Of a DNA stretch of 64,000 bases, positions 25,940 to 60,809 are shown in pieces. Made by a program: the position numbers and the translations under genes. The stretch is taken from positions 91,137,382-91,201,381 of the forward strand of contig NC_068986.1 in the NCBI RefSeq assembly GCF_001194135.2, read 5' to 3'. The notes beneath the pieces were generated by a model. It had not been told where the DNA came from. It saw only the letters and a program-made list of their open reading frames with translations, and ran no database searches. Every line of letters starts with the position of its first letter. Within the stretch, counting starts at the first letter, position 1. The DNA comes from Octopus bimaculoides. Lineage: Eukaryota.

Positions 25940-25974
<35 letters not shown>

Positions 25975-25987
25975 NNNNNNNNNNATA

Positions 25988-26021
<34 letters not shown>

Positions 26022-36668: not shown

Positions 36669-36683
36669 TTTATTAAATTTATT
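36669..36683 (-). terminator. Tandem AATAAA poly(A) signals of SELENON
   Basis: Plus-strand tttatt at 36669-36674 and 36678-36683, about 115 nt beyond the SECIS. Confidence 0.6.
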
Positions 36684-36796
36684 TTAACTAGTTCAATATA
36701 AAACTTTGCAACAGTAAAAAAATTAACCTCAATCTTCTATTGAAGATGTACCTAAATATATAGCTAAGAGTTTGTTTCTCTTTCTCAGTTCAGTTG

Positions 36797-36894
36797 TGCA
36801 CATCCAGTATGTACCCAGATTTCAGCATCAGGCACAAACTTACCATTTAAGGTTTTACATTGGTGCCATCATTCAGGTATCAACTGAGTGTGCA
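36797..36894 (-). promoter_or_regulatory. SECIS element (type 2) in the SELENON 3' UTR
   Basis: Minus strand reads ...UACCUGA AUGAU GGCACCAAUGU AAAA CCUUAAAUGGU AAGUUUGUGCC UGAUG CUGAAA UCUGGGUA...: AUGA/UGA core, GGCAC/GUGCC helix II, apical AA 11-12 nt above the core, and a lower helix extending to UGCACA/UGUGCA. Confidence 0.92.
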
Positions 36895-37059
36895 TAACTA
36901 AATGTGTGCAGGTTTGGAAGAAATTTAACAAGTCATATCACAGAACTTGCTTTAGTTCTTAGCTGAATTCTATATAAAAATATATATTTCATATAATTAA
37001 AATAATAATGATATAAACATAACATAAATTTGTTAATCTGCAATTCCCGACTTTACAGG

Positions 37060-37150
37060 TTATAGGTTTGGTCTCGTACGGTACTTTAAACTACTTTGAA
37101 AACCTGTCTTCAAGAAATTTAAGTAAGCCACGGAGGTTGGGTTTTGAAAC
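37060..37150 (-). CDS. SELENON: Selenoprotein N exon 8, last coding exon (GFQNPTSVAYLNFLKTGFQSSLKYRTRPNL*)
   Basis: Long pyrimidine tract then ctctag| acceptor; phase 2 fits; FQNPTSVAYLNFLKTG resembles FEDPSTATYMQFLKEG; TAA at 37062-37060. Confidence 0.93.
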
Positions 37151-37867
37151 CTAGAGATAAAGAAAGAAAGATAAATTACTTAATAGTTATGTTTCCATAC
37201 AATTTCCTCATAGTTAAAAAATTACAATATAATGTAAATGAATCACAAACTGTTAATGAATTTAAATACATACATATATATGTAAAGATGGATGTATAAT
37301 GACTGAATTACAATTTCCTCACAGAATTTACTACATACACTCACACACACATTATTATTTGAAAGATTTTGTCCTTCTGTTGTCAAGAACTTGGTTGAGT
37401 ACATCAAAGACGTTTTGAGCTAAACATTTTAAGCAACAAATAGCAGTTCTGATTTCCATGGTTACATCAGATAGCAGTATAAAAGAAATTTTTCTTGAAA
37501 TATCTAACTGCAACCTAAAATCTATATTATCACTAAAACTACATCTCAAAGACTTTTTTCATTGTTAGTTAATAAGACCCCCATTGCATATTTATTTTAT
37601 TTTACAATAGNNNNNNNNNNNNNNNNNNNNNNNNNNNNNNNNNNNNNNNNNNNNNNNNNNNNNNNNNNNNNNNNNNNNNNNNNNNNNNNNNNNNNNNNNN
37701 NNNNNNNNNNNNNNNNNNNNNNNNNNNNNNNNNNNNNNNNNNNNNNNNNNNNNNNNNNNNNNNNNNNNAAGGGCTTCATTTGTAAGGAATTTTGTTTGTT
37801 TTTTTTTTGCTTCGCTTTCTCTCTGACATTTTATCTTTTGCTGACATTCATCAGTGAAAGATATACC

Positions 37868-37902
<35 letters not shown>

Positions 37903-38094
37903 TCCGAGTTCCTATTCTTACCTACCAAATTCTACTCACAAGCGTTACCCAACAGAGAGTGTAGCCTGAAGATAAGAGTGTTTCACTAGATTGAGTTGCT
38001 ACTTCTCCACATTGAGAGGTCACACCTTTGGTACTACAGACACATGGTTAGAATGCTGCAGAAAAGAATCACAAAATAAATTCTTGAAACCAGG

Positions 38095-38159
38095 AGACCA
38101 TGACCAAAATAGTTGGGCACTACATGGTGTAGACCATGACCAAGATAGTTGGGCACTAC
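38095..38159. repeat. 36-bp tandem duplication
   Basis: agaccatgaccaa.atagttgggcactac at 38095 and 38131. Confidence 0.9.
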
Positions 38160-39376
38160 TTAAATATAGAGGTCCTGAACAGTGCACACTGGTTAGGGTT
38201 ACCTTTCCTTTATATCATTACGTAGATGCGTCAGGGCCTCTGTATTTAAGTAGTACCATTAGCTGGATAATATCCCTGGTCTCGGTTGTGTGGGAATCCA
38301 GTAAGAAAGTTTAATAATGGTTGCTTCTGATAAGATTCTGTGGAGGAAGTGCCTGATGGCTCAACCTCCACAACCTTCCTAGGGATAGTGGAGAGTGAAA
38401 ATGGATGAATGGTAACACTGACAAACACAAGACTATAGTTACCCAAGGTGTTATGCATACAATTGATTTCCAAAACTACATGTCATGAAGCAAACTTCTT
38501 AACCATACCAGAAAGAAACAAAGGCAGTTTTTGAACTCAGTATGAGATGGGATATAAGAAAAACTGAAAAACATTTTGTTCAGCAACCTACTAATTCTGC
38601 TGTCCACCACTGGCGATTACATTAACTGTGAGTTCTAAGATAGATATAAAGCCATTGCTTTTAATAATAATTATTATTTCTTTCATAGAACCAAAGCTTC
38701 AGATTTAAAGGGAAAGAACAGAGCCAATTATATCTACTCTAGTATTGAATAGATACTTAATTCCAGAAGAATGAAAACCACAAGACAAAGCTGGCTCCAA
38801 TGGGATTTAAACACAACATAAAATTGTGTAGCTAAATACTGCAAAGCACTGTATTTGATGACATAGGAGAGGCACTTTTCTCTCAAAAGAAATATCTATA
38901 AAAAAAAAACCCCATCCCAGATCCTATTTGCAAAGTTTTACCTATATTACATACTTTAATATACTAAAAACTCGTTTCCTGCATATGTGCTGCTGAAATT
39001 GGGATGCATCTAATATACCTGTGCATCTTTTAAGCTATCAAATGTGGTATCCTTTGTGACACATAACTGATCAAGTCAAACATTGCTCCTTATAATAATG
39101 TCTAACACTGCCACTGCCTCTAATAATCATAATAACTATTTCATTTGTCACAAGGGTAATGGTAAGAGGATAAGGACAAAGCACAAAGATGGTGGTGGTT
39201 ACACAGAATAATGAATAACAGAAAAGAAACATGGAAAACAACAGTATACAAAAAGGAATGAAATTGGATGTTTGAATAGGGGATAGCTCCTTGGGGACAA
39301 CCTGCAAACCCAACAGATCTGAGATTACCCTAACTGCCAAGGACAATTGCTCTTTCCCTACTATGTAATCCAATTT

Positions 39377-39770
39377 TGTGGAGGTGCAATGGCCCAGTGG
39401 CTTGGGCAGTGGACTCACGGTCATAGGATTGCGGTTTCGATTCCCAGATCGGGCGTTGTGAGTGTTTATTGAGTGAAAACACCTAAAGCTCCACGAGGCT
39501 CCAGCAAGGGGTGGTGGCGAACCCTGATGTACTCTTCACCACAACTTTCTCTCACTCTTTCTTCCTGTTTCTGTTGTCTGTAATTCAAAGGGACAGCCTT
39601 GTCACACTGTGTCACGCTGAATATCTCCAAGAACTATGTTAAGGGTACACGTGTCTGTGGAGTGCTCAGCCACTTGCATGTTAATTTCATGAGCAGGCTG
39701 TTCCGTTGATCGGATCAACTGGAACCCTCGATGCCATAAGCGACGGAGTGCCAACAACAACAACAACAAC
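39377..39770 (+). mobile_element. tRNA-derived SINE with (CAA)n tail and a 10-bp TSD; second copy at 48435-48803
   Basis: A/B-box-like head (ggcccagtgg, ggtttcgattccc); TSD aatccaattt at 39367-39376 and 39771-39780; strong similarity to the 48435 copy. Confidence 0.88.
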
Positions 39771-40336
39771 AATCCAATTTATAGGTGTATACTGAAAGTA
39801 GGCTCATTTATTCAGGTCATAGTCATCAATTCCATTCCTAGTTCTACAACTTTATTGGAGGGCAGTATCACGTTCTTCAACCTTTCTTTTTTTCTCTAAG
39901 TGGAACTTGAAGAAACTGAGGGATTAAGTGAAGAGGAGAGTCTGTCCTGAGCCTTTTTCAAAAAAAAAAAAAAGACACCCATAGTTGTGTAGGTAGGAAG
40001 TCTGTTTCATAACAATATGACCTTGGGTGAAATCCCACTGTATAGCACCTCATGAAAGCCTTGGGTTAGCCAATACTTTGTGTATGGAATTTGGTAAGTA
40101 GAACTATACAGTATTTATGTGGTAGGGGACAGTGTCTGTATTTATGATGTGTCCTTTTATACCTCTGAACTTAGAGATTGGTAAATAACAGATAAAATTC
40201 AACTACTGAAATTGATATACTTACAAAGTCCATGAAGACAATGCCCTGTCTAAGGAATGAAATCAGTAAGAGAATAACAGAAACTTAAGTGATTTATTGT
40301 ACAAACAGTTGATAAAAAAGTTTTAAAATGCCATAC

Positions 40337-40500
40337 CCTATATTCCAAAAGTCAGATGGAGCATCAAGGAGATCATTGGCATTTACTTTATTCAAGATAG
40401 TGCCATTGGGGAGAGATACCATCATCATGACAGGAAATTTATAATTCTCAAGGAACATAGTTGCAACTTTAGCAGCCTCGTCTTTGCCTTTCTTCAGATC
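40337..40500 (-). CDS. SELENON: Selenoprotein N exon 7 (DLKKGKDEAAKVATMFLENYKFPVMMMVSLPNGTILNKVNANDLLDAPSDFWNI)
   Basis: acttcag| acceptor and GG|gtatgg donor; phase 0 to 2; Y.FPV.MM..LPNGT....NAN..LD is conserved. Confidence 0.96.
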
Positions 40501-40579
40501 CTGAAGTCACCAAATAAGAATAAAATAATTTTGATTAATCGTCATCATCATCATCATAAGGTGGATAACTTGTGTAGAG

Positions 40580-40825
40580 CAGTGGCTCTCAATCTAACAA
40601 AAACCATGCCCCATCCAAATTATTAGTGAAATTTCTGTCCCTCTTCCATTTCTGTTAATAAGAAGACAAAAATTAAACTTGTATCCATATAATTCTCTTT
40701 TCTTCACAATGGTAATGGCTAATTTAAAAAGTTGAAATCCATCTAAAATTTATTAAACATGGCAATTTGTCAGCCCAACTTTTCAATCCTTACAGCAACT
40801 ACCCACATTTCCTTGAGAAACACTG
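40580..40825. mobile_element. hAT-type MITE
   Basis: CAGTGGCTCTCAA ... TTGAGAAACACTG with 8-bp flanks gtgtagag and gagtagag (7 of 8 identical). Confidence 0.7.
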
Positions 40826-41768
40826 GAGTAGAGCACAGCTCTATGGTCTGAATAATGTGTTTAATCCACTGTCCAAACTTGTATTTCTACTTAGTCTCTA
40901 AGTAACTGCCTGTTACTGTCTCTCTTCTGTTACTCCCTTCCCTATCAACCTCTCTTGTGCTAGTGCCACAATAAAATGCACCCAGTACATGCTGAAAAGT
41001 GGCTGGTGTTAGGAAAGACATCCGATCATAGAAACCACATTAAATGAAATGTAGAAGTAACTTGTGGTTTCCAACTTGTTTCAGAAGGTGCTAACTCCAA
41101 ATAGGAACTGACTTGGTCTGTGACAACCTGTCTAGGTCATGCTAGTATAGAAAATTGATGGAAAGGTGTAATGACAAAATATTTGGTTGGTTGACAGAAC
41201 AAAAATCTGTGTGAAATTCAAATACAAAAATATTTATTAATCATTAACAAAAATAAATGTCATAGCAACGATGGCAGAAAAAAAGATATTTCCACCTGAG
41301 TCAGTTTGTATGTATATCAGCAATGATAAATTAATGGCAGGAGTAATTGAATTCTGTAGCCAAAGTAAATGATGTAAGTCCCAGCAGCAATTGTTCTTGG
41401 CTGTTATTAGTCAGTTACCAGACGAACCATTTTTTTTTATACCCAATGGTCTGTCAAAGAATAAATGCCAAAGACAAAATCATTAACATTTTAATATGTA
41501 GTGTAAGCTTCTGCTGGATCTATTGTGTTTCAACAGTCAGCCCAGCTATTCATAAAAACAAGATTTTTAATGCATTTACCAAGGACATGAATTTCAGGTT
41601 CAATTCCTATGCAGTAATTTGGTATTTGGGACTCTACTGCTATTCCTGCTACAAAGGTAAAAATAGAAGTATGGTGATTTTTAACTACTAGCTGCAACTT
41701 CTGCCCAAAGTTAACCTAAAACAAGCTTTTGACAAGCAGAGAAGGAACTGAAATTGGCAACAACTTAC

Positions 41769-41978
41769 CTCAAGATCAACAACAAGGCAAGAAGTACTGA
41801 TAAAGTGCTCCTTAAGGAAAGACATAACGGGCGAACTCTGGAGAGCAGTCTCTCGCAGGGTTCGCCCTGAACCTCAGCAACTCTGATCATCTAGTACACC
41901 CCATAATACGATGGAGTGAACTAATTTCCGTTCAGCCTGGGCCTTTTTAAAGGCTGAAGTAAAGTTATAATAAGGGAC
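41769..41978 (-). CDS. SELENON: Selenoprotein N exon 6 containing the Sec codon ([70 protein letters not shown])
   Basis: ttttcag| acceptor and GAG|gtaagt donor; 210 nt; in-frame TGA at 41876-41874 (residue 501) with homology continuing for 35 codons beyond it. Confidence 0.98.
41829..41867 (-). promoter_or_regulatory. Selenocysteine redefinition element (SRE) hairpin 3' of the UGA
   Basis: GGGCGAAC-C-CUG-C-GAGAG-ACUG-CUCUC-CAG-A-GUUCGCCC: 16 bp, one C.A mismatch, one bulge, 4-nt loop, starting exactly 6 nt after the UGA as described for human SEPN1. Confidence 0.9.
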
Positions 41979-43527
41979 CTGAAAATATAATTCCATATTT
42001 AGTAGAAATTCAACATACAGGTACAATACACACACAATATACATGCAAAAAACACTATATACACACACACACACAACACCTGCAATAGACACTACATACA
42101 CAAAATCATATACACTTGACTCTACACACTACATACACTCTTCAAGTATTGAGTCATGTAGATTAGCTTCATCGTGCAGTTTCCACATGACAGGGAGAAG
42201 CCTCTACATGGTTGCTCAACTTGCTACAAATAGCAGTCCAATTTCCTTCAGATCACATCATACTATTTTAAATAAGGAAAGAACATGAGACAACATACTT
42301 TAAATAGATTGGATGGCCATTGCTGGAACACTCTTTGTCATAGGTTTGCATGAGCAGGATTAAAATAGGGATTAAATGATAATAATAATAATAATAAAGA
42401 ATTTTTTACATGCTCACCTACATGTACAAACATATGCACACACAACTCAGAATGCATGTATTAACACAGAAACATCCTTTATATTGTGCACAATCATACG
42501 TCACTTTACGTAATACACACAACCACAGTCATTGTATTATAATCTATGTCGTTTTTAGCCCAAGTTTATGTTGTTTTTAGCCAAATTTTGGTTGGCAAAA
42601 ATCAAAAGTATTCCAACTGTAACCATTCTGTCTTTTTTTATTATCTTTCATTTATCTAATACCAGCTTAAAAGCTGCACTCCATGCAGCCTTTTAATCTA
42701 ACTCCTGCAGAGGCCTAATTGGGTCTGAGGCCCAAAACTAAAGAGAGCTAAAGAACATGGCTATAATACATCCATAATGATTATATGCCCCAGTGGTGTG
42801 TGATCAGAGGTTAAGGAGAAATGAGAATTAATTCTGTAATGCAATCATTCTATTGTTCCAGTCCCAAGTTGAATTCCAACTGTTGGTCAATTTGTCCCAA
42901 AGTTTTCATCTCGACATAAAATTAACAAAGTTAATGTCATTTATCACACTCCTTGATCTCTGATATTATCTGACAAATGCCAACCAAGAAAGCATGAATT
43001 AGCCAAGCTTTACCTGCTAGAAATAGCAACCCAAATGCTTTTAAATCAAATCCCAATAATGGATGTTCAAGAACCAAATGAAGGGCAGATTTTTCAATCC
43101 TGGGATCATCCTGATTTCAAAAAGGTATAATATGTCTATATAGAGCAAATGTAGACTGAGATACAGGTGTCCCAGACAGACAGAATTTCACGTTTATTTA
43201 TATAGATAGACTTTGATATCTTATATTTTAAGATGATAGAGTATAATTTAAGGAAAATTTGACTGCTATTTCTATTATGTCAAGTGACTGTACAGAGGCT
43301 CTTATTGGTTCATTGGTCAAGCAGGCATGTAAAAGGCCCCTTTCTTATAATCTGCACAACTGCATTATGTAGGGTATATCTTAAAACAGTCACACTACGC
43401 GACATAAATATGCACACACAATGTATATAAACATACACATGGTCTGTTGCTTAGCAACATTTCCAATACAATATACAATGCAAAAAGTCAAACAAAAGAA
43501 ATAAAATATTCTACTAAAATAACCTAC

Positions 43528-43766
43528 TTCCTTAAAAGGAAACATTCTGGCTTCCATACTTTTCATTGCTTCTTCCATGGAGATTTCTTCCGTCCATGAA
43601 ATAGATGATATTTCTTGGTTGTTAACCTCCTCATCAATACCTTCCACATCAATTTGGTCAGTGTGAACAGCAGATCTGCTGAGGGACTTCAGTTCCATTT
43701 TGGGTAGGAATCCAATGTTGACTTCCATATTGACTTCATCAGCCACATCTGTCAGCCATTCCATGT
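43528..43766 (-). CDS. SELENON: Selenoprotein N exon 5 (DMEWLTDVADEVNMEVNIGFLPKMEL...SMEARMFPFKE)
   Basis: tctttcag| acceptor and GAA|gtaggt donor; phase 1 to 0; DMEWL, NMEV.IG..P.MEL and M.PFK are conserved. Confidence 0.96.
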
Positions 43767-44871
43767 CTGAAAGACATACAGAGTTGTAAAACATGAAACG
43801 TTTGTATTGTAGGACGTTTTGCCTGTATGAGTATGCAAGTTTGTGAAGGAGAGTGTGTGTATGTTTGTCTATGTATACATGGTGTGTTTGTATGTGTGCA
43901 AGCGTGTATATGTATGCATGTGCATTTGTATGTGTGTGTATGCATGAGTATTTTCTAAATCCTATTGCATCATAAGAACACTAAAAATGTTGGCTTGAGT
44001 ATACCATCGTTGTCGTCTTCATTGTTTTAACATCCACATTTTCCATGCTTGTAGGAGTCAGATTTTCTATGGCTAGATGCCCTTCCTGTCACTAACCTTG
44101 GCTTGTATCCAGGTAAGATAATACTTCACCAAGGCTTTACATGTGTTCATGGAAGATTGGAAATGAAGGACTCTGCTTGAATGATAGTAGCTCATTTATA
44201 AGTATTCTATGATGTGAAGACAAGGACACACACATATATATGCAACAGGTTTCTTTCAATTTCCATTTACCAAACCCACTCAAGGTTTTACTGACCCAGC
44301 ACCATAGTATAAGACATTTTCTATGCTGTGAGACTGAATCCAAAACCACAGGGTCAAAAAGCAAACTCCTTATTCATACAGGTTTGGAACATTCTATCTT
44401 TATTCAAGCTATATTCATAGAAGAATTTGAAGAATCCAGTACTAGGAACTAATGAAACATTTGTTTATTATGTATGTAGTTCATTAATATATGAAATGAT
44501 TAGAGCATCTTATCCTTGCATATACTGATAAACTGTCTCAGCTTACAGTTGCTAATAACAGTTAGGTGGGAGGAGATAGCATAGGTGTTTTGGCTACGGG
44601 CACAGTGCAGTATTGGTGACAGGAAAACAAACTATTTGAACTTTCAGCCAAGAAACCAATTTCCCCTTCAGTCTGGGTACCACTAATTCAAATGAGCAAC
44701 ATCCCACCAACAGGTTATACATTATTAAGATTGTATAAATGTAGTTTATTCACACACTAGTCTTCAAATAGCATCATAAACACACAGCGACACATACAAA
44801 CACACATATGCACACCAGGCATATCAACTACAAAACATTAATACAATATATTTTCAATTATTTCTACTAAC

Positions 44872-45023
44872 CAACATTGAGTTTATTGTGAGTTGGTACA
44901 GCAAGATGGAACTTCATGAGAGACGTAGCATTTTTGTTAATGATGAGATTGCCAAAGAAATATGCTGGAGTGAACCAAAATGGAAGATTTGGTCGTTCAT
45001 TCAGCTGGAATTCTGCATGTATT
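44872..45023 (-). CDS. SELENON: Selenoprotein N exon 4 (RIHAEFQLNERPNLPFWFTPAYFFGNLIINKNATSLMKFHLAVPTHNKLNV)
   Basis: atgcag| acceptor and G|gttagt donor; phase 2 to 1; RIHAEFQL and PFWF.PA are conserved. Confidence 0.97.
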
Positions 45024-45181
45024 CTGCATGAATTAAAGATGGAAATGAGAAGAAAGAATATATTAAATATGTAAATATGAAACTGAATACTGAGATTTTT
45101 GACATATACAATATTATACATTATAAGTTCTAATTTGAAATAGGAAAAAGAAGCTCACTTTTCTGTCTAAAATTGATGATT

Positions 45182-45182
45182 A

Positions 45183-45216
<34 letters not shown>

Positions 45217-45312
45217 CCTATCTATCTATCCACCTATCTATCTATCTACCTATCTATCCAGCTATCTATCTATCTACCTATCTATTTATCTATCTATCTA
45301 TCTATCTATCTA
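45182..45312. repeat. (CTAT)n microsatellite; many (TA)n, (CA)n, (TTA)n and (ATC)n tracts occur elsewhere
   Basis: Direct reading of the sequence. Confidence 0.95.
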
Positions 45313-45394
45313 CAATTTGTTTTTCTTCCTCCCACCATCACAAGTCGCAAAGGACCTAACTAAGCAAAACAAATAATTTAAAAAATGCAATTTG

Positions 45395-46515
45395 AATCAT
45401 CAAGTTCTAATTCCTAGTGTAATTATTTTGATTACATTACTGTTGTGCAAGAGTACAACACCCCTGGCAAGAATGGACTGGACCACTACATATAAATAGT
45501 AGCAATCTGAGCAAGTGAGGTAGATTAACCTGGACGGTGAGCAAGTGTGGTTTCCGTTCGTTGACAAGATATTTCCCAGGTTCACCTCTTCTGGTGAACA
45601 GGAAAGCTGGATCAGGCATAGACCAAGGCTGGGAGCTTGGCAAACAGAGTGTTGACAGGAACTCGTGCTTCTCTCCTGAATGAGCATTGCCAGCAGAGTG
45701 GGTACCATTTTGGCATACTATAGAGGGTTGGTAGAGGGCAAGTGTAATGACGGCTTGGGGGAGACTGGGTTTCGATGAAAATCAGCTTGCCAACCTACAT
45801 CAAAGGACTTTTGGCCTGGGACCTATGGACAACTTCCAGAAGTCCCTGGCTTGGTTGTGCTTTCGAAGTGCCTTGCCAGTCAGAATAAACTCACGGGGCA
45901 TGGCATCATGGTGTCACTTACATGCCCTCATTGTGAGCAGAGCAGCGAAACTGTACTGCATACTATCATACAATGTCCGAGTCTCTCAGACCTGTGCCAC
46001 AGTTGGGAAGAGTACAGCTGTCAGCTGAATCAATTATTAAGATCATTCAGCTGTCTTCTCTAAAAGGAGAAGAGAAATTCTGTTTTCTAGCCATAATAAC
46101 TATAGCGAAAGAGGCGATATGGAACGTGCATGGAAGAGGTATCACATCAGGCACCTTCGTCTCAGGGCTTTGGTTAACCTCGTTTTATATCACCTAAGAG
46201 GGAAAGCATGTCTGGAGAAGAAATGCCTGATGGCAAAAAAGTATGAAAGAAGATGAAAGAAAGTAGCCTGAATGTTGGGTATTTAAGTGCCTTATTAAAC
46301 AGAGTAAAAAAAGCACAAAGTAAACGGTTCAATGCAGGAATGTGGTTGGTGGGGTCAAACCCATTCTGCGTCCAGTCATTTTTTGTTTCATTTTCATCCG
46401 TAATTATAATGTATTTATTCATATATATGTAATATCATTCAATAAGTCCCCAACCCCATTTGTCCCTTGTATTGTCCCCTCTTTGTTTAACCCTTGTGGT
46501 TTCAATAAAATCATC
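45395..46515 (+). mobile_element. Degenerate Tx1/L1-like LINE ORF2 3' end with zinc knuckle
   Basis: LAWLCFRSALPVR, TCPHCEQSSETVLHTIIQCP and AIITIAKEAIWN motifs in broken frames; AATAAA near 46503. Confidence 0.75.
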
Positions 46516-51339: not shown

Positions 51340-51658
51340 CCCATAAAGTGCTGGGATTTGCACTTACATAGCATGGACTGCTAAGCACATTTTATGACAA
51401 TAAGACTACTATGCACACATAAAAAACAACAAAATGGTTAAAATATCTTCTTAGTGTATAATGGTGGCAAGTTCTACATCATCTGAAAAGTCATTAGTTG
51501 AACTATTAGTCCTCTTGCATTCTGGTGGGTACCAGAGCCTTTGAGTAACATTAGAACCCAACAAACACCCATAAGTTAAATGTATCTATCTGGGCCATGA
51601 TTGTGGCCTGTTGACCTGTGCGTGACAGCCACGATTGTGGCCCATCATGCTTTATGCG
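51340..51658. mobile_element. piggyBac-type MITE, same family as 29783
   Basis: TTAA|CCCATAAAGTGCTGGGATTT ... GCTTTATGCG|TTAA; shares the internal tggcctgttg sequence. Confidence 0.6.
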
Positions 51659-52407
51659 TTAACATACATCAGTAAAATAATGTTGGACTGAACCTGTGAT
51701 TTCTAAGCAATTTTTAACTTGTAACATTTACTTCTTGTAACTCTTATTCTTCATGATAAAGGCATAAACATCACAACATCTTTTCTCCAGCATAAATTTG
51801 GAGGTTATGCAATGAATGCAAGTTTTCCTAATGTGTTCTATCTTCTATATTTTACTTGTTTCAACCATTGGACAGTGGTCATACTGGGGCACTACCTTGA
51901 AGGGTTTTAATTAAACAAATGAAGCCCAGTACTTGTTTTTGACTCTGGTACTTATTATATCAGTCTCTTTTACCAGACTGCTATGTTACAGAGATATAAA
52001 CAAACACCAGTTGTCAAGTGATTGTGGAGGAACATACACACACACACATATAAGGTAGTGCTCCAGCATGACCAGAAACACAGCCCAGATCCTTGCAATA
52101 GGGTGGTCCCTGCTAAAGACACTACATATGGAGTGTAGTGTTAAATCCAGAAATGGATTAAATCCACCACCCGAGACCAGCAACAGCTCTGGTGACTTTC
52201 ACAGTTTTCATAGGGAAAATTTCACTCACATGCATGATTACACCAAGGCTCTCATAGATGATATGTGCTCAAACAAATTTCTCAACCACATAGTCATGCC
52301 TTCATTTACAGAATAGGATTGAGTCAATCAGTTAAATGTGGTCTTCAAACAAAATAGCAATTTAAATATATTTCAAAGAACATAAGATATTACATGTTAT
52401 CTCTTAC

Positions 52408-52769
52408 CTAAAAGCTATGTCCACCAACTCAGAATTGTATGCTCTAATGCAAGCCACAGCTCCCTGTGGTTCAAAACGTGACAGGAGAAATGGGCGCGGG
52501 TGAAACATAGAAAGGAGACTGTGGAAAATAGCTTGGTTGTCTGTAAATAGAGATGGAAAATATCTGTTGCTGCTTGGCATTTGTCCAGTAATGTACTGGA
52601 ATCTACTGCCTTCCCACAGCGTGTAGACTTTACCCACAGAGTTCATGAAATCTGGGTTGGTTGGCAGAAAAGGTTTGAAGTGTTTAGCAGAATATATCAT
52701 GAGATTCTTGGCTGGTTTTTGCCATTCTTTGAGTCCAGCAAAACAGTTCTGAGTTTCCATAACCTGTTC
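52408..52769 (-). CDS. SELENON: Selenoprotein N exon 3 (EQVMETQNCFAGLKEW...SLLSMFHPRPFLLSRFEPQGAVACIRAYNSELVDIAF)
   Basis: Poly-T then tttag| acceptor; AG|gtaaga donor; phase 0 to 2; the LLSMFHPRPF..RF.PQGAVAC signature is specific to SELENON. Confidence 0.97.
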
Positions 52770-53850
52770 CTAAATTTAAAAAAAAAAAAAAAAAAAAAAG
52801 GAAGGGAAATAATAATCATACTTTCAAATATTGACACAAAACAAGGCAGCAATCTGGCAGAATTGTTAGCATGCTGAGCAAAATGCTTAGCAGCATTTCA
52901 TCTGTCCTAATATTCTGAGATCAAATTCTCTCAGGGTCAAATTTGCTAGTCATCCTTTCGGGGTTGGTAAAATAAGTATGAGTTGAACACTGGCGTCAAT
53001 TTGACTCAGTTCCACCTCCAAACTTGCTGGCCTTGTGCCTAAATTTGAAACCAATATTGACACACAAAACCATGTATCTTTAGCAGAAGTGGTTTATATC
53101 GTTTAATTGACTCTTAGGACTTGAAAATTCATCATGCAAAATTGTAAATTTCTTTCAAATCAGTATTTATAATTATTTATTTATCCCACATGTTAGTTTG
53201 AATAAAAAGAAGCGCTTAACTGAAGTTTCCATAATCAAAGGTATCATTCAATGAATAATCAGCCCAATTCATTTTGGTGCGAGGGGACAGATGACAATAT
53301 CAACCACAATACTTAACTGGTTCTTTTGACAAGATTCATGTGAATTCAGTACAATGAGTAAAGATATTTTAATTAATAATAATTCCATGTATGGGGAGAA
53401 GAAATAATAATAGCTTAATCACCAAGAAAGATGGGGAAGACAACTCTGAAATGTTAACTGATTAAAAATAGAATGTAAGCAATGCAATGAAGAGCAAATC
53501 TAATCTTTGCCTTAGAATGGTAATTTGTTTTGGTTTTATTAGATCACCTCAGAATCAGAATTAGCATGGGCAACTTCCAATGACTGACACCAATAACAGA
53601 ATGTGTGTGTGTGTGTGTGTGTGGTGCATGTGAAAGAAAGAGAGAGTGAATGCATGTGTGTGTAAGAAAATATTATGTATCGTGTGAGTATGTGTGTGTG
53701 TGTGTACTGGTTTACATATAGAAAGAGTGTATCTAAGGACAACTAATTAAAAGGTGAGATAATTGTTTCAAAAATTTAAGCATTATTCAGATATTCAAGC
53801 CCCTCAAGCAATACCCGTATGCAAACATCTGCAAACTGAAAGATACTTAC

Positions 53851-53961
53851 ACCTTCCTCAATAATCTTCTTCATGGAAGAAGGTGTAAGAGGAACGAAGC
53901 TGGCCTCCATTACGAATGCTTCATCTTCAACATCAAACTGGAAATTATACTCGAATGGAAC
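53851..53961 (-). CDS. SELENON: Selenoprotein N exon 2 (VPFEYNFQFDVEDEAFVMEASFVPLTPSSMKKIIEEG)
   Basis: ctccag| acceptor and GGT|gtaagt donor; 111 nt, phase 0-0; EASFVPLTPSSMKK resembles EARFQPLLPETMTK. Confidence 0.92.
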
Positions 53962-54109
53962 CTGGAGAAGGAAATAAGAGAAACAAAAACCAAAATGAAG
54001 GCGTGCAAGAATGTTGCATTAGCAACAGGGTAACTTGTGGTCAAACATGATAAGCCCCTGCATAGTATACAATTACAGAATATTGAGTTTATCTGAATAA
54101 TTGGTCTTT

Positions 54110-54345
54110 TTACCTTTTACTTGTTTCAGTCATTGGACTGCAGCCATGCTGGAGCATAGCCTTGAAAAGTTTGCTCAAGCAAATCAACTCCAATACTTAT
54201 TTTCTTTTGAGCCTGGTAATTACTCTATCAGTCTCTTTTATTGATCTACTAAGTTATGGGGATGTAAACCAACCAATACAGGTCGTCAAGTGGTGGTGGG
54301 GGCAACAACAAACACAAAGACACACATACATACATTATATATGTA

Positions 54346-54401
<56 letters not shown>

Positions 54402-54566
54402 NNNNNNNNNNNNNNNNNNNNNNNNNNNNNNNNNNNNNNNNNNNNNNNNNNNNNNNNNNNNNNNNNNNNNNNNNNNNNNNNNNNNNNNNNNNNNNNNNNN
54501 NNNNNNNNNNNNNNNNNNNNNNNNNNNNNNNNNNNNNNNNNNNNNNNNNNNNNNNNNNNNNNNNNN

Positions 54567-54597
<31 letters not shown>

Positions 54598-54750
54598 GTT
54601 TCTTTCAGTTTCCATCTACCAAATCCATTTACAAGGCTTTGGTTGGCCTACAGCTATAGAAGATACTAGCCCAAGGTGCCACAGTGTGGGACTGATCTTA
54701 AGACCACATTGTTGGGAAACAAGCTACAGAACCACACAACCATGCCTATG
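54110..54750 (-). mobile_element. tRNA-derived SINE with internal (TA)n, spanning an N gap; partial copies at 51850-52075, 62270-62330, 19760-19940, 37870-38030
   Basis: Shared ttttacttgtttcagtcatt.gactgc.gccatgctgg and cagtttcc.tctaccaaatcca blocks. Confidence 0.75.
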
Positions 54751-56179
54751 TAAATATACTCATTTTTTTTAATGCCAACTCGTGTACAATATTGTATGCC
54801 TGTTGAGAGAGTTTCTCTTCACTACATAGCTAGGTACAAAGTTCCACAAACATGCTGGAATAATTAAAATAGTGTTATTCATTGATATAGTCCTTTCTTT
54901 ATCTCATTTGTTTATAATTAGATTCTATTATGCACACTGAATTAAATATCATAGTACTAACACACACACACAAAACAATCATTATTATCATTACTGTTTT
55001 GTTGTTTACTTTTCCATGCTTGGCATGGATCAGATGAGAATACATTGAGGTAGAGTTTTCTACAGCCAGATACTCTTCCTTATGTTAACCCCTATCTATT
55101 TCCAAGTATGACAATACCCATCCAGTCTATTATCTAGTACATACAAATCACAGTATGTGTATATTGACTAATGCATACATTTCCACAGTTCTCAACTGAT
55201 TTTCACCAAATTTTACATGCACATTACTTATGTCCCAAGGATGGTCATGTACTACAACATTTTGCCCAGAACTCCTGCATAAATGGACAAACCAGGAAAA
55301 ATGGTGGTTTACATGGGTTTTTCTCTAATTTGTTGTATGTACATAGTTTTTTTGTATGTAGGGTCTTCCATACTTTTTTAATCTATATGGTTGTATATTG
55401 GCATGAGAGAATATTTTTTAGTGGTTTTTCACATTTTCTTTTATTTATCATTTATTTTTATGTTGTAATTGTGCATTATTACTTGGTTAGAGAATATTAT
55501 AAAAGTGAAAGGATTTTGTCTATTTATTTATTTCGACTGTCCACCTGTGACGGTGACTAGGAACATTGTACATGATGAATGTCCAATACCAAACAATATT
55601 AATCTCCATATTTAAACTGCATTAAACTTCAGCAAGCTTACTTTTACCTATTTTGAGTTACTTGAAAGGTGATGTTCCCTTCCCTCTATTCTATTTGTTG
55701 ATACCTTTGTTTATCTACCAATGCGTTGTTTCACTTTAAGGATGCTTATTTACCCATCCATTATGATATTTCAAACGTGACATCTTTTCACTGTGAACTG
55801 CTAAAGATTCAAAGCAGTATTCGTTAACTGAAGTCAAACTCTTCAGGTCTTCATTTTTCGTTACCTGAAGTCAATTGCAGAGTGGTCGTACTCTGTAAGC
55901 ACATAGCAAATACATTTCTTTAACTCTACTTTTTCAAGTAGGTATTATATTGCCATTTTTGAACATACCAATCATACTTCTCTCTAATAAAAAAAATAGC
56001 TCCTTTTGTTGTTGAGTAAAATAAACTTGCAGAGGGGAAGTTTCAACCTCTTCCTTCAATTTCCTTACACCATTTATGTGGCTGTTTCTGACAAGAAATT
56101 TTGCTTTCATGTAAAACAATTATATTTTGTAATCTTTATCCATAATCTACTCCCAAAACCCTTCAGTAGCATATGGACA

Positions 56180-56806
56180 AGGACAGCTGTGTAAAGAAGT
56201 GCTGATCTCTAACTGTGGAAGAAATCTGTAGTAGAGGTAGACACGTGACGAGGTGGTGAAGCATGATCTTTGAACTTTGGGCCTCACAGAGGCAATGACT
56301 AGTGACCGAAACCTTTAGTGATATGCTCTGCTTGAGGAGACCTGTCAAGCCATGGGAAATCATAGTCCTGGCTGATGCTGGTGTCACGTAACTGGCAACT
56401 GTGCCAGTGGATCATAATTGGATCTTTTGAGTGTTGGGTTACATGGAGGCAAATTAGCAGATGCTGGTGGTACATGAAAAACTCCTTTCAAGTGTTGTGC
56501 CTTAAGGAGGCAACGACTGAGACCTTTGGCATTATGTTGTGCTTGAGAAGAAGACCCATCAAGCTAAGTGAAATTGCAGTCATGGCAGATACCAGTGTCG
56601 CACAAATGGCACCCATGCTGGCGGCACATAAAAGCACCCGTTAAACTCTCAGAGTGATTGGCATTAGGAAGAACATCCAGCCATATAAACCATGCCAAAT
56701 CAGACTAGAGTCTGGTGCAGCCCCTCAGCTTGCCAGCCCTGGTCAAATAGTCCAACCCATGCTAGCGTGGACAGTGGATGCTAAATGATGATGATGATGA
56801 TGATGA
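56180..56806 (+). mobile_element. RTE LINE 3' end with a duplicated ORF-terminal segment and the same 3' tail as the (GAT)n SINEs
   Basis: DEVVKHDL..LGLTEAMTSDR-like peptide followed by the family tail ccaacccatgctagc...gatgatgat. Confidence 0.75.
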
Positions 56807-57955
56807 TATATGTATTATATATACATACACACACACACATTCATACATAGACATGTATGTATATAAAGCATATGCACATATATATGCATGTGCATGTATT
56901 ACAGACATGACTGTATTCAAGTTTGATTTTTTTTTATCAAGGATTTTTTATATTTATTTATTTGTCCTTTATGTTTAGTTTGAAACAATGGTGTTCCTAA
57001 AATTTGTCCGTTTCAAGATCTTCACAATCCCACTAGTGTTAATGAACTAATGGATTTAGAAGAAATTTGTAAATTAGGCATGAGGCTATTCATATCTGCC
57101 TCTTTTACTTAATTCAAACTTTAGATGAAAGGATGAAGGTAAAGTCAAACTAGGCTGGAGTTGAACTCAAAAGAGAAGGGGCATAACTAAATATCAGATG
57201 ATCTAACAACCCTGCCATCTCATAATAATCCTAATAATTATCAGATTAAATAATGTGGTGTTCAAATTTACAATACACATTAACATATTTTGTTTGTTGC
57301 TGTTAGCATCAAGTCAGCTGTGAATCAGTAGATCTACAATCAAGGCTTTCCAACCATAGCTACTTCATTTTCTTTTCAGATGATAAAGTGTGATTTGAGG
57401 GAGAATTAGCTGCTATTCAAAACTGTCAGTTTCTTTTATTTGTGTGAGTATATTCAAGTAGGAATATATTCATACATTACAAGTGTATGTATGCCTGCAT
57501 GCACAGCACCACACACACACACACTCACACACACACACACACTCACACACAAGCTTTCGTACATGTTCCAAGCCTCTTTCACCTATACAGAAAAAAACAA
57601 AGAAACGCCCTACTTTCTTTTTAAAATAACTTGTTTTCCTTCTCAGCTACCTAAAACAGTCACTATTCATTATTAACAAACAACACCAAAAATTACACAC
57701 CCTCTATAATTTTCCTAAAACCTAAGGCAACTCCTAAATATATACACAATAGAATGAATAAAAGTCACATTTACAATAAGACTTTTTTCCCACTATGTTA
57801 TCACTACAGGAACAGAAACATTGTTTAGAACTGCAACAATGGATTTCTACAAATGGTGGGGTGAGGAATAATATTAAGATATTGTTGGCAGTAGCTGAAA
57901 GAACCAGTAGAGACCTGGACAAAATGCCTTGAGGTATTTAGTTACATCACTTTAA

Positions 57956-58175
57956 CCCTTTAGCATTCAGATTCCTCTGTCAAATGTAATGTTTATTTAT
58001 TCACACTGTTTTGGATTAATCATGCATCATCTTGTAGCTTCAAGATTTTGATGATGTGGTTGTTTATTTTTACAATGACATTGTAGAGTAAGTGTGAGAA
58101 GCCTGACATGACTAGTTTGAACATAAAACAGGTAGAATATTTGAGATGGATATAACTGATTTAAATACTAAAGGG
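57956..58175. mobile_element. piggyBac-type MITE inserted into a SINE
   Basis: TTAA|CCCTTTAGCATT ... AATACTAAAGGG|CTAA; SINE sequence resumes on both sides. Confidence 0.7.
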
Positions 58176-58950
58176 CTAAAGTTTGAATTTAAATCACAGA
58201 AATCAGTTTTGCCTTGTTTTCATAGGCTCCATAAAATAAGTGTAATTCAATCGATTTAATCCATCAACCAGTTTAACACCACTAAACGGATTTCCACCTG
58301 ATTGCAAATATTTGGTTCAGGGCTCCAGCAAGTCAAAGGATAATCTAAGAGGTATAGTTCTTCATCCCCTCCCTCCAGAAGTCTTGGAAGTGGATAAATG
58401 CCACAAAATATTCATGGCTGCTACATGTTCATTTCCTCTGAATAAACCAAAAAATATTCTTTTTTTGAAGTATTAAGGCGAATTTAATCAGCCATGATTC
58501 CTTTGAAATATTTAATCATCATCATCGTTTAACGTCCGCTTTCCATGCTAGCATGGGTTGGACGATTTGAATGAGGGTCGGTGAAACCAGATGGCTACAC
58601 CAGGCTCCAATCTGATCTGGCAGAGTTTCTACAGCTGGATGCCCTTCCTAACACCAACCACTCCAAGAGTGTAGTGGGTGCTTTTACGTGCCACTGGCAC
58701 GAGGGCTAGTCAGGCAACGGCCACACTCAAAATGGTGTTTTTTACGTGTCACCTGCACAGGAGCCAGTCCAGCGGCACTGGAAACAGCCTCACTAGAATG
58801 TTTTTTCACATGCCACCGGCACAAGTGCCAGTAAGGCGACACTGGTAACGATCACACTCAAATGGTGCTATTTACATGATGCTTTTTAGGTAGCACTAGC
58901 AAGGTCACCAAATAATTTGCAAGGCAAGATCCTTCAACTGATCATCTTGT

Positions 58951-59221
58951 AGTAACGCCTTGTCTCGTGCGCATGCATAGTCATCAATATCCAAGTTTGG
59001 CGCCCTGATTCTTTCTCTTTTCCCGGCCAGGCGGCTATGAGCATGGACGTGTCAAGCTGTCTCTCCATCATTCCAACTCTGGGGACCGCCCACATCAACA
59101 TTCCAACGTCTCAGCAACCATGCTCTCTCACAGAAAGAGTCTCAGCAACCAAGATTAAAGCTGCCTATTTCCCTCCATAAATAAATATTGTTGTGTTGAT
59201 AGTTCGGAGTTCTGCGTTACA
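58951..59221 (+). mobile_element. Solo LTR (Gypsy-like), 271 bp, in SELENON intron 1
   Basis: (A)GTAACG ... CGTTACA inverted termini, 4-bp TSD ttgt at 58947-58950 and 59222-59225, AATAAA at 59180-59185, CpG-rich. Confidence 0.65.
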
Positions 59222-60275
59222 TTGTTATTTAGAATTTAATATAGGAAAGCGGGTGTACACCTAATACTGTATAACCACCTTCCTATAATCTAAAAATACA
59301 CACACACATTGGATAGGGTGAACTAAGGATTTTTTTTACTGCTAGCCACACACAGTCATCATGGCTGGAAAGTCTTTCATGATATATCTATCACTAGTAA
59401 AGCAGTAAAAAAAGATTATACATGGTCGCTGGAACTGCTAGAACTAGCAGCCAAATTTTCTTCACACTACACTATCTTGAAAAAAAGTAACAATACATCA
59501 AGGAGAGTATTCCAAGGTAAGCTACGCCTGAAAACTAGATGGTATGTTCATAGCTGAAATGTCTATGACTCTAAGTCAACTGGATAAGTGCTGAGCTCAG
59601 AATAAACACCAGCAAACGTGATCTGTATTAAGATTTGAACACATATCTATGCCCCTTAATCTCACAACAGTTTCAGAGTTAACACTCATATTTCTGTTGT
59701 TTTAATCCTCAGATCAAATTTGAAATAAGTTTCAGTTAAACATCACCGTCATATATGTGTGTGTGTGTGTACACACATACACACAGGTAAACTACAAGGT
59801 TAAAAAATCTAATATAGGCACAAACTAGAAATTATAGGAGGGTGGTAGTCGATTATATTGTTCCCAGTATTTGAACGTTATTTATTTTATCGACCCTAAA
59901 AAAAAAAGAAAAGAAAAGTTGAGCTAGACGTGATTTGAACTCAGACTGTAAAGATCCAGAAAAAGTACCGTAAAACATTCTGTTTGATGCTAAGGCTTTT
60001 TATATATAACCCACAACCTAATGATTAAGAGATTACTATCACATTTAATAATGCTACTGAATTTAGAGATAAGTACAACTTTTATCAACCTTGGATATTT
60101 GAGAAGACATCATTATTACCGGCAGTTGATTAAATATCTAAATGTCTTGCTTAGATTCGTCGTTAAAGTTCTATCGTGCCGAGCCATGTTGTTTGAATGA
60201 GATAGTGTGTGTGTGTCTACTGGGGGGTGCATTAAGTATACGTGATGTATAGGAAGAGTATAATATTCTACTTAC

Positions 60276-60809
60276 CCTGACGTCAATTAATCTGTGGGTA
60301 ATCGGAATAAATTCATTTAAAGACAAATAACCGTCTTCGTCCAAGTCATATTGGTCGAACAACTTCAGTCCCGCCTCTCCTACGCTGGCCAGAAGTTCTT
60401 GCTTGGCATTTTCGTAGTTCAATTTGTCAATTGATTTCTTGTACAAAATAGCAACTACAGCAACAATGATGCTAAACCAAAACAACCAGGATTTCATATA
60501 TTTCATGCAGTTAAAAAATTTCATTTTTATTTTTGAATCGCCAGTCTTTTTGCCTTTTTTATTTTGCATTCGTTGGCCTTTTGTGACATCGTTGCGGTTC
60601 GAACTCGAGTTGGTATTTACATCTCTAGAAAAGTTATCGGAATTCCGATAAGAAGACGAAGCAGCTTCGTTTGATTTCTTCGGTGAACTCTTGTTTTTCT
60701 GTCGGTTCCTTGATTCAGAATATTTGGGACTCGATGGAATCGACTTATTACCTGACTTGGCAGGAGACCGAGTAACGACGGAACCAGAAGGCCCCGTCGT
60801 ACTGGCCAT
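60276..60809 (-). CDS. SELENON: Selenoprotein N exon 1: basic Ser-rich N-terminus, transmembrane helix (WLFWFSIIVAVVAILY) and EF-hand
   Basis: ATG at 60809 in context ACGATGG; AGG|gtaagt donor; SVGEAGLKLFDQYDLDEDGYLSLNEFIPITHRL aligns with human SELENON [33 protein letters not shown] (recalled). Confidence 0.93.

What the first reader, a model, noticed from the sequence alone, without database searches (positions are those of the whole stretch)
36797..60809. Complete selenoprotein N recoding system: in-frame UGA, SRE and SECIS in one gene
Eight minus-strand exons join with matching phases into a 620-aa SELENON. The ORF track stops at TGA 41874, but homology continues through GSGRTLRE and two more exons, so the TGA is read here as Sec (U501, SCUG motif). 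Both cis-elements known for vertebrate SEPN1 are visible. Automated annotation often truncates or mis-splices such genes, so this model may be absent or wrong in the existing annotation; whether it has been described I cannot check.
Basis: partly seen in the sequence, partly recalled or inferred. Interest (0 to 1): 0.85.

Follow-up and report, generated by a model that had tools for sequence, protein, structure and literature searches.

The report
Octopus selenoprotein N gene, mis-annotated as truncated
This is the ordinary octopus copy of the selenoprotein N gene, complete with the UGA codon read as selenocysteine and its two helper RNA hairpins; the only news is that public annotations cut the protein off at that UGA.

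Summary
Eight minus-strand exons (60809..37060), all GT-AG and phase-compatible, give a 620-aa protein with one in-frame TGA (41876..41874, codon 501, motif SC-U-G). It aligns end to end with vertebrate, echinoderm and mollusc SELENON. Both assembly gaps lie in introns (1 and 7), and their flanks are collinear with continuous Octopus vulgaris sequence.

A 39-nt hairpin starts 6 nt after the TGA (-30.6 kcal/mol). It is more stable than all 2000 synonymous recodings. It is kept, with compensatory changes, in 10 SELENON mRNAs or genes from octopus to teleost.

A SECIS (AUGA...AAAA...UGAU) lies 178 nt past the stop codon. It is the only SECIS_1 match in the window. Its score (26.6 bits) is below Rfam's cut-off, but so are the scores of the SELENON SECIS elements of a bivalve-like transcript (30.6) and a teleost-like transcript (25.9).

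The window is Octopus bimaculoides. The UniProt entry A0A0L8HM81 and the O. vulgaris protein CAI9724856.1 both stop at residue 500, that is, at the Sec codon.

Selenoprotein N was already known as a selenoprotein in molluscs. This is therefore a correct re-annotation of a known kind of gene, of low surprise. Sec insertion itself is inferred, not shown.

The parts
60276..60809 (-). Exon 1 (534 nt, codons 1-178). The ATG at 60809 is the first ATG after an in-frame stop. It encodes a low-complexity S/N/K-rich N-terminus (~100 aa, shared with O. vulgaris only), a hydrophobic segment W108-Y123 (60441-60488) and an EF-hand at residues 149-168 (60306-60365).
   Evidence: identical to annotated protein P0121; EF-hand Pfam hits E 6e-4, below cut-off; aligned with the TM/EF-hand region of other SELENONs
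53851..53961 (-). Exon 2 (111 nt, phase 0/0)
52408..52769 (-). Exon 3 (362 nt), includes the conserved FHPRPF...QGAVAC region
44872..45023 (-). Exon 4 (152 nt), IHAEFQLNE...PFWFTP
43528..43766 (-). Exon 5 (239 nt), DMEWL...NMEV.IG
41769..41978 (-). Exon 6 (210 nt): carries the Sec codon and the SRE; ends ...VVDLE
41874..41876 (-). In-frame TGA = codon 501, read as selenocysteine in the motif S-C-U-G
   Evidence: the same codon is TGA in O. vulgaris and in 8 further SELENON transcripts
41829..41867 (-). SRE hairpin: begins 6 nt 3' of the UGA. Lower stem GGGCGAAC/GUUCGCCC (8 bp), middle CUG/CAG, apical GAGAG/CUCUC, loop ACUG.
   Evidence: fold -30.6 kcal/mol, z -5.35; 0 of 2000 synonymous recodings as stable; 95.5% of cells paired with 3 compensatory pairs in 10 taxa
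40337..40500 (-). Exon 7 (164 nt), DLKKGK...YKFPVMMMVSLPNGT...NAND
   Evidence: the junction is homologous to the one in cephalopod-like transcripts
37060..37150 (-). Exon 8 coding part (91 nt including TAA 37062-37060), ...FQNPTSVAYLNFLKTG...
36818..36881 (-). SECIS element in the 3'UTR, 178 nt after the stop. 5' AUGA at 36872-36869, helix GGCAC/GUGCC, AAAA 12 nt after AUGA, small apical stem (type-2-like), 3' UGAU with GA at 36829-36828.
   Evidence: Rfam SECIS_1 26.6 bits, E 0.0057 on 601 nt; sole SECIS hit in the 64 kb; motif scan; conserved in O. vulgaris with changes only in the apical part; orthologous SECIS of a bivalve-like and a teleost-like transcript score 30.6 and 25.9 bits
36669..36683 (-). 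Two overlapping-range AATAAA polyadenylation signals (36683-36678, 36674-36669), about 135-150 nt 3' of the SECIS: likely mRNA end
   Evidence: motif only; inference
37611..37768 (.). Assembly gap inside intron 7; not in the CDS; flanks collinear with O. vulgaris L001 37272/37369
54402..54566 (.). Assembly gap inside intron 1, within a (TA)n microsatellite; flanks collinear with O. vulgaris L001 21359/21651

Best explanation
The region is the Octopus bimaculoides orthologue of SELENON (selenoprotein N). SELENON is an ER-membrane redox protein with an EF-hand and a thioredoxin-reductase-like SCUG centre.

The mRNA is spliced from 8 exons. During translation the UGA at codon 501 is redefined as selenocysteine. 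[quoted passage not shown] The stable hairpin starting 6 nt after the UGA (the SRE) raises the efficiency of that redefinition. Translation then continues for 119 more codons to TAA.

Shown here:
- the gene structure;
- homology along the full length;
- conservation of the UGA and of the downstream frame in relatives;
- the presence, unusual stability and covariation of the hairpin;
- a SECIS-type element at the expected place.

Inferred from established knowledge of eukaryotic Sec decoding:
- that Sec is actually inserted;
- that both RNA elements act as in mammals.
For: Gene model:
- 8 exons, GT-AG introns, fitting phases, 620 aa, one TGA.

Homology:
- 384 homologues were found, and the named ones are SELENON.
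- The model aligns end to end with coelacanth, cichlid, whale, marmoset, sea urchin and starfish SELENON. Invariant residues lie on both sides of the Sec position: DDQSC | SGRTLRET...FPV.M...PNGT...NAN.

Conservation in relatives:
- O. vulgaris has the same 8 exons of identical lengths, the same splice sites, TGA at the same codon and the same stop.
- Transcript contigs of two cephalopod-like species carry the TGA in frame, followed by 115 conserved codons, spliced as in the model. So do transcript contigs of four other invertebrates and a teleost-like fish, followed by 118-131 conserved codons. A fifth invertebrate contig ends inside the coding sequence.

SRE:
- MFE -30.6 kcal/mol, z -5.35 against dinucleotide shuffles.
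- It is more stable than 2000/2000 synonymous recodings of the same peptide, and it is the most extreme of 60 windows along the CDS.
- Across 10 sequences, 11 stem pairs are 95.5% paired, against 24-52% for slid controls. Three pairs show changes on both sides, for example G-C to C-G at pair 11/47, which costs Gly->Ala and Ser-Pro->Pro-Arg in the protein.

SECIS:
- SECIS_1 match over all 64 model positions, with AUGA, AAA and UGAU in place.
- It is the only SECIS match in the window and lies on the gene's strand.
- It is conserved in O. vulgaris.
- Its score is in the range of orthologous SELENON SECIS elements.

Literature:
- SelN is a selenoprotein in the mollusc Lottia and in other invertebrates (PMC3473315).
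- The SRE of SelN enhances Sec insertion (PMC5727441 introduction; PMC3541580).
Against:
- The SECIS_1 score (26.6 bits) is below Rfam's gathering score (35), and nothing was reported at gathering thresholds.
- Thermodynamic folding of the SECIS region alone is unremarkable (z -0.95). This is expected for a motif built on non-Watson-Crick pairs, but it gives no independent support.
- The whole 3'UTR is 92% identical between the two octopuses, so SECIS conservation there is not discriminating.
- No canonical SECIS was found in the squid-like transcripts, so the cephalopod-wide picture is incomplete.
- Between the two octopus species, 8 of the 119 residues after the UGA differ. That comparison alone therefore shows no strong purifying selection.
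- The start codon and the long N-terminal extension are supported only by the two octopus sequences.
Confidence: 0.93

Rival explanations
1. The TGA is a real stop codon. The gene encodes the 500-aa 'EF-hand domain-containing protein' as annotated, and the downstream exons are untranslated or belong to another gene.
For: This is what the public annotations say: A0A0L8HM81, and CAI9724856.1 plus a separate 103-aa gene. There are no protein data to the contrary.
Against: - The 119 codons after the TGA stay in frame across two more introns.
- They are homologous to the SELENON C-terminus in every phylum sampled.
- The active-site motif would be cut in half.
- A SECIS and an SRE are present.
- The annotations are what a gene caller unaware of Sec would produce.
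Confidence: 0.03
2. The UGA is decoded, but not (or not only) as Sec. One route would be A-to-I editing of the codon to UGG (Trp), which is plausible in principle in cephalopods. Another would be hairpin-stimulated near-cognate readthrough.
For: A stable 3' hairpin can stimulate readthrough of UGA in other systems (PMC3159437). Cephalopods edit mRNA extensively (established knowledge; PMC9989829 covers editing in O. bimaculoides).
Against: - A SECIS of the same type as in orthologues lies in the 3'UTR.
- The UGA is conserved from teleost to octopus, and the genomic codon is TGA in both octopus species.
- No editing evidence was seen. The transcript contigs of the relatives still read TGA.
Confidence: 0.03
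3. The locus is a decaying or unexpressed copy (pseudogene), and the functional SELENON lies elsewhere in the genome.
For: Only one window was examined, so a second copy cannot be excluded.
Against: - There are no frameshifts or stops other than the Sec codon.
- All 14 splice sites are intact and conserved in O. vulgaris, with zero indels in any exon, against 85-92% identity with gaps in the introns.
- The homologue search returned a single octopus cluster.
Confidence: 0.02

Closest known systems
Vertebrate SELENON / SEPN1 (human selenoprotein N; here represented by coelacanth, cichlid, whale and marmoset proteins and a teleost-like transcript, L014)
   Same: 41-43% identity over ~80% of the length. 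Same order of TM segment, EF-hand, conserved core, SCUG centre and C-terminus. Same SRE position (6 nt after the UGA) and nearly the same lower stem, GGGCGAAC/GUUCGCCC. Same kind of 3'UTR SECIS with a similar Rfam score.
   Different: 8 coding exons instead of the 13 of the human gene (PMC12839072). An extra ~100-aa low-complexity N-terminus. A shorter linker before the C-terminal FxxP...FLK.G motif. The apical part of the SRE pairs in a register shifted by one base.
SelN of the limpet Lottia gigantea and other invertebrates (Jiang et al. 2012, PMC3473315)
   Same: Same family, already recognised as Sec-containing in a mollusc, an annelid, amphioxus, a cnidarian and a sponge. Invertebrate SECIS elements are mostly of the AUGA_AA type, as here.
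   Different: A different molluscan class (cephalopod). In the protein collection searched here, the Lottia entry too is truncated at the Sec codon (P0099).
Octopus vulgaris CAI9724856.1 'selenoprotein N-like isoform X2' and O. bimaculoides A0A0L8HM81 'EF-hand domain-containing protein'
   Same: Same gene. A0A0L8HM81 equals residues 1-500 of the model (100%), and the O. vulgaris protein is 92% identical.
   Different: Both end at Cys500, that is, at the UGA. The 120 C-terminal residues, including Sec, are missing, or in O. vulgaris are called as a separate 103-aa gene.
SEPN1 selenocysteine redefinition element (SRE; Howard et al. 2005/2007, Maiti et al. 2009, cited from PMC5727441 and PMC3541580; originals not held)
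   Same: A stem-loop immediately 3' of the Sec UGA, inside the coding sequence, overlapping the codons for [11 protein letters not shown]. These are the residues whose human mutations (G463V, R466Q, R469W/Q) weaken the SRE (PMC3541580).
   Different: Function was not tested here. The octopus apical helix differs in sequence (GAGAG/CUCUC) from the CCGGG/CCUGG type of most other taxa.

Membership tests
SELENON (selenoprotein N) protein family | Homology to SELENON along the whole length, including the part after the Sec codon | tested here: met
   E 1e-126 to 1e-91 to named SELENON proteins; end-to-end alignment with invariant columns before and after position 501
SELENON (selenoprotein N) protein family | SCUG redox motif with U encoded by an in-frame UGA | tested here: met
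   [16 protein letters not shown] at 41876..41874; the same in 9 other sequences
SELENON (selenoprotein N) protein family | N-terminal membrane anchor followed by an EF-hand | tested here: inconclusive
   Hydrophobic W108-Y123 was identified by eye and by alignment. EF-hand Pfam models match residues 149-168 at E 6e-4 to 8e-3, below the curated cut-offs. The Ca-binding loop DLDEDGYLSLNE is canonical by inspection.
SELENON (selenoprotein N) protein family | Protein actually contains selenium / is made full length | not testable with these tools
   Needs 75Se labelling, mass spectrometry or ribosome profiling
Eukaryotic SECIS element | Located in the 3'UTR of the same mRNA, on the same strand, beyond the minimal distance from the UGA | tested here: met
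   36818-36881(-), 178 nt after the TAA and about 540 nt after the UGA in the mRNA
Eukaryotic SECIS element | Core AUGA on the 5' side and GA on the 3' side flanking a helix, with unpaired AA(A) 10-13 nt after AUGA | tested here: met
   AUGA-U-GGCACCAAUGU-AAAA...GUGCC-UGAU
Eukaryotic SECIS element | Reaches the Rfam SECIS_1 gathering score | tested here: not met
   26.6 bits against 35. The yardstick is that orthologous SELENON SECIS elements also fall short: 30.6 bits (L011) and 25.9 bits (L014). The cut-off is therefore too strict for this gene family and does not count against the element.
Eukaryotic SECIS element | Binds SBP2 and supports Sec insertion | not testable with these tools
   Needs a reporter or binding assay
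SEPN1-type selenocysteine redefinition element (SRE) | Stable stem-loop beginning a few nucleotides (6 in SEPN1; own knowledge of Howard et al. 2005) 3' of the Sec UGA | tested here: met
   The hairpin spans +10 to +48 relative to the U of UGA; -30.6 kcal/mol, z -5.35
SEPN1-type selenocysteine redefinition element (SRE) | The structure is selected beyond what the protein sequence requires, and is phylogenetically conserved | tested here: met
   0/2000 synonymous recodings as stable; 95.5% paired, 3 pairs with double changes, slid controls at most 52%
SEPN1-type selenocysteine redefinition element (SRE) | Stimulates UGA redefinition | not testable with these tools
   Needs a dual-reporter assay with stem mutations and compensatory mutations

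The most novel reading that the evidence does not exclude
The SELENON SRE hairpin is ancestral to bilaterians and has been maintained for more than 550 million years by compensatory substitutions. Some of these force amino-acid changes next to the active site (Gly->Ala at U+3 paired with Ser-Pro->Pro-Arg at U+14/15 in the annelid-like sequences). On this reading, an RNA recoding signal constrains the evolution of the protein's catalytic loop.

I could not establish whether this protostome-wide conservation has been published.
Probability: 0.3. Interest if true: 0.45.

Novelty: new member of a known kind. Interest (0 to 1): 0.27.

Why it matters
The practical value is a corrected gene model. 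The octopus proteomes in UniProt and GenBank that I could reach lack the catalytic selenocysteine and the last 120 residues of SELENON. In O. vulgaris one gene is split into two. Anyone studying ER redox or calcium handling in cephalopod muscle, or counting cephalopod selenoproteins, would be misled by these entries.

The same error pattern (truncation at U, or exon-skipping around it) shows up in most invertebrate entries returned by the homologue search. This illustrates a general annotation weakness that is already well recognised.

The side result may interest people working on recoding, if it is not already documented: the SRE hairpin is kept with compensatory changes from teleost to octopus, bivalve-like and annelid-like animals.

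Tried and rejected
- Rfam at gathering thresholds on the whole window gave nothing. The SECIS appears only with E-value thresholds.
- Thermodynamic folding of the SECIS region is not informative (z -0.95).
- Octopus-octopus comparison of the 3'UTR cannot single out the SECIS, because the whole UTR is 92% identical.
- I looked for a SECIS in the two squid-like transcript sets, both with Rfam and with strict and relaxed motif scans of my own. None was found. A conserved block just after their stop codon does not fit canonical SECIS pairing by inspection. The real element may lie elsewhere or be non-canonical.
- Amphioxus (L013) was left out of the SRE alignment because an intron follows the UGA after one base.
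- P0083 (scallop) and P0121 (the window's own annotated product) are not on record for contig look-up. I therefore could not see how exons 7-8 are annotated in the O. bimaculoides assembly itself.
- Howard et al. 2005 and 2007 and Maiti et al. 2009 are not held. What I say about the 6-nt spacing in human SEPN1 rests on my own knowledge.
- There is no PDB relative by sequence.
- No tRNA genes were found in the window. No other convincing protein-coding gene was seen among long ORFs.
- The miRNA-family hits sit on simple repeats, and I treat them as chance.


Full report
**Observation**

Open stretches on the minus strand with SELENON-like peptides were trimmed to canonical splice sites. The result is 8 exons: 60809-60276, 53961-53851, 52769-52408, 45023-44872, 43766-43528, 41978-41769, 40500-40337 and 37150-37060. 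All introns are GT..AG and the phases are compatible. The CDS is 1863 nt, giving 620 aa. There is one in-frame TGA at 41876..41874 (codon 501...[15 protein letters not shown]...) and a TAA at 37062-37060.

**Assembly gaps**

The N runs at 37611-37768 and 54402-54566 lie in intron 7 and intron 1. The second sits inside a (TA)n microsatellite. The sequences flanking each gap map in the same order and orientation to uninterrupted sequence of the orthologous Octopus vulgaris locus. Window 37769 and 37600 correspond to L001 37272 and 37369. Window 54580 and 54365 correspond to L001 21359 and 21651. Neither the frame nor the continuity of the coding sequence depends on the gaps.

**Identity of the gene and the organism**

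A search of the protein collection returned 384 homologues, and the named ones are selenoprotein N. The best cluster holds O. vulgaris CAI9724856.1 ('selenoprotein N-like isoform X2', 92% identity) and O. bimaculoides UniProt A0A0L8HM81 ('EF-hand domain-containing protein'). The latter is 100% identical to residues 1-500 of my model. The window is therefore O. bimaculoides, or something indistinguishable from it.

Both database proteins are exactly 500 aa long, so they end at the Sec codon. In the O. vulgaris assembly the C-terminal exons are called as a separate 103-aa gene. The identity over residues 1-500 also means that junctions 1-5 of my model agree with the existing annotation.

The full model aligns end to end with coelacanth, cichlid, whale, marmoset, sea urchin and starfish SELENON. 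There are many invariant columns after position 501: [22 protein letters not shown]. Pfam sees only a sub-threshold EF-hand at residues 149-168. No PDB relative exists by sequence.

**Is the UGA read through?**

There is no direct evidence for this species, but the comparative evidence is strong.

- O. vulgaris has the same eight exons of identical lengths, the same splice-site dinucleotides, TGA at the same codon and the same stop. The exons are 92-97% identical with no indels. The introns are 85-92% identical with indels.
- Transcript contigs from public sequencing runs show what the spliced mRNA looks like. These come from two cephalopod-like species (51-54% identity), five other invertebrates and one teleost-like fish. 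In every case an in-frame TGA after DDQSC is followed by conserved codons running to a stop: 115 in the cephalopod-like transcripts and 118-131 in the others. One of the five invertebrate contigs (L009) ends before its stop. The sequence across the positions of my junctions 6 and 7 is homologous.

**SRE**

The 62 nt from the UGA fold into a hairpin of -30.6 kcal/mol that dominates the ensemble (frequency 0.86; z -5.35 against dinucleotide shuffles). The stem starts at +10 from the U of UGA, which leaves a 6-nt spacer.

The region is coding, so I tested whether the protein sequence alone explains the structure. None of 2000 synonymous recodings of the same 19 codons is as stable (z -4.6 to -4.9). 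Among 60 windows of 20 codons along the CDS, the one starting at codon 501 is the most extreme.

I aligned 10 sequences without gaps: two octopuses, two cephalopod-like species, five other invertebrates and a teleost-like fish. In that alignment 11 stem pairs are 95.5% paired, against 24-52% when the 3' partners are slid by 1-3 columns. Three pairs carry changes on both sides. Pair 11/47 switches G-C to C-G in three sequences, and pair 15/43 switches A-U to G-C in four. The first switch changes the protein (Gly to Ala at U+3, and Ser-Pro to Pro-Arg further on), which argues for selection on the RNA. The apical helix pairs in a register shifted by one base in the octopuses.

According to the literature held, the SelN SRE enhances Sec insertion but is not essential (PMC5727441), and human mutations in it cause myopathy (PMC3541580).

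**SECIS**

A scan of 36500-37100 against Rfam gives SECIS_1 at 36818-36881(-), covering all 64 model positions at 26.6 bits (E 0.0057 for that search). AUGA, AAA and CUGAU are aligned to the consensus. A whole-window scan at E<=1 shows this as the only SECIS match, and it is on the gene's strand.

The score is below the gathering score of 35, which is why the default scan was empty. As a yardstick, the SELENON transcripts of a bivalve-like animal and a teleost-like fish give 30.6 and 25.9 bits. The cut-off is therefore simply too strict for this gene's SECIS.

My own motif scan finds the element in the window and in O. vulgaris, at the same distance from the stop. The only differences between the two lie in the apical part. 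AATAAA signals follow at 36683 and 36674.

**Mechanism**

This is standard eukaryotic Sec decoding. The SECIS recruits SBP2 and eEFSec carrying Sec-tRNA. The SRE, close to the ribosome that is paused at the UGA, favours redefinition over termination. The product is a 620-aa ER-membrane protein with an EF-hand and an SCUG centre.

The gene structure, homology, conservation and RNA structures are shown here. Sec insertion and the function of both RNA elements are inferred by orthology.

**Comparison with what is known, and novelty**

SelN is already listed as a selenoprotein in the mollusc Lottia, the annelid Capitella, amphioxus, Nematostella and a sponge, mostly with AUGA_AA SECIS elements (PMC3473315). 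Reviews say orthologues exist in 'some invertebrates' (PMC12839072). Selenoprotein mis-annotation is a recognised problem (PMC13134290).

No held paper mentions an octopus SELENON. No full-length octopus protein is in the collection searched. I therefore file this as a new member of a known kind: a correct re-annotation that will not surprise specialists.

The one point that might be new is the depth of SRE conservation with compensatory changes in protostomes. I could not check it against the primary SRE papers, which are not held.

**Verdict**

- Observation: confirmed.
- Interpretation: supported.
- Confidence in the best explanation: 0.93.
- Interest: 0.27.

Noticed in passing
window 60750-60809 (-): The first 44 nt of the coding sequence form a very stable hairpin starting 2 nt into the ATG (ACGACGGGGCC....GGUUCCGUCGU; -31.1 kcal/mol for the first 60 nt). 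It is the second most extreme window in the synonymous-recoding test (z -4.1). It is kept in O. vulgaris (-29.0). It could affect initiation.
   Followed up: partly
window 39380-39790 and 48431-48806: Two copies (90% identical, same orientation) of a ~380-410 bp interspersed repeat, probably a SINE, in introns 7 and 3 of the gene.
   Followed up: partly
window 38095-38159; L001 36483-36655: A 36-bp unit (AGTGCCCAACTAT.TTGGTCATGGTCT...) is present about twice in intron 7 of O. bimaculoides. It matches at least five overlapping positions spaced 36 bp apart in O. vulgaris, so it is a minisatellite that differs in copy number between the species.
   Followed up: no
window 20951-21292 (+): A 113-aa ORF (…KIVKKANGVLASLSKTF…LRLYMAMVQPHLEFC…) looks like the C-terminal tail of a non-LTR retrotransposon reverse transcriptase. 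This is by eye only.
   Followed up: no
L001 33990-38346 (O. vulgaris OX597819.1): The O. vulgaris annotation splits SELENON into a 500-aa gene ending at the UGA and a separate 103-aa gene covering the C-terminal exons.
   Followed up: yes
proteins P0035, P0071, P0082, P0041, P0051, P0090, P0012, P0020, P0026: Many database SELENON entries avoid the Sec codon by mis-splicing. Bivalve and annelid entries jump from ...LLWG/LLWE to the region after the SRE, and several Ensembl-derived vertebrate entries have wrong residues at the U position. Others (Lottia, scallop, amphioxus) are truncated at U. The problem is widespread, not specific to octopus.
   Followed up: partly
L002-L007, first ~60 nt after the stop codon (e.g. 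L006 2240-2290, L004 1968-2015): The two squid-like SELENON transcripts share a conserved block right after the stop (…TGRTGSWGGAGACCMTCTCRG.T.ACTGTGATATTCAT…), but no canonical SECIS was found anywhere in their 3'UTRs by Rfam or by my motif scans. Their SECIS is either non-canonical or missing from the contigs.
   Followed up: partly
L013 18582-18590 (Branchiostoma lanceolatum): In amphioxus an intron appears to follow the Sec codon after a single base (TGAG|GTAAC). If so, the SRE could form only in the spliced mRNA.
   Followed up: no
window 13196-13802, 3975-3984, 25975-25984: Three further assembly gaps lie outside the finding. The 607-nt gap and the 54.4-kb gap are flanked by (TA)n/(TATATA) repeats. 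The Rfam miRNA-family hits (9740-9849, 25903-26084, 1006-1086, 56805-56908) sit on such simple repeats and look like chance.
   Followed up: no
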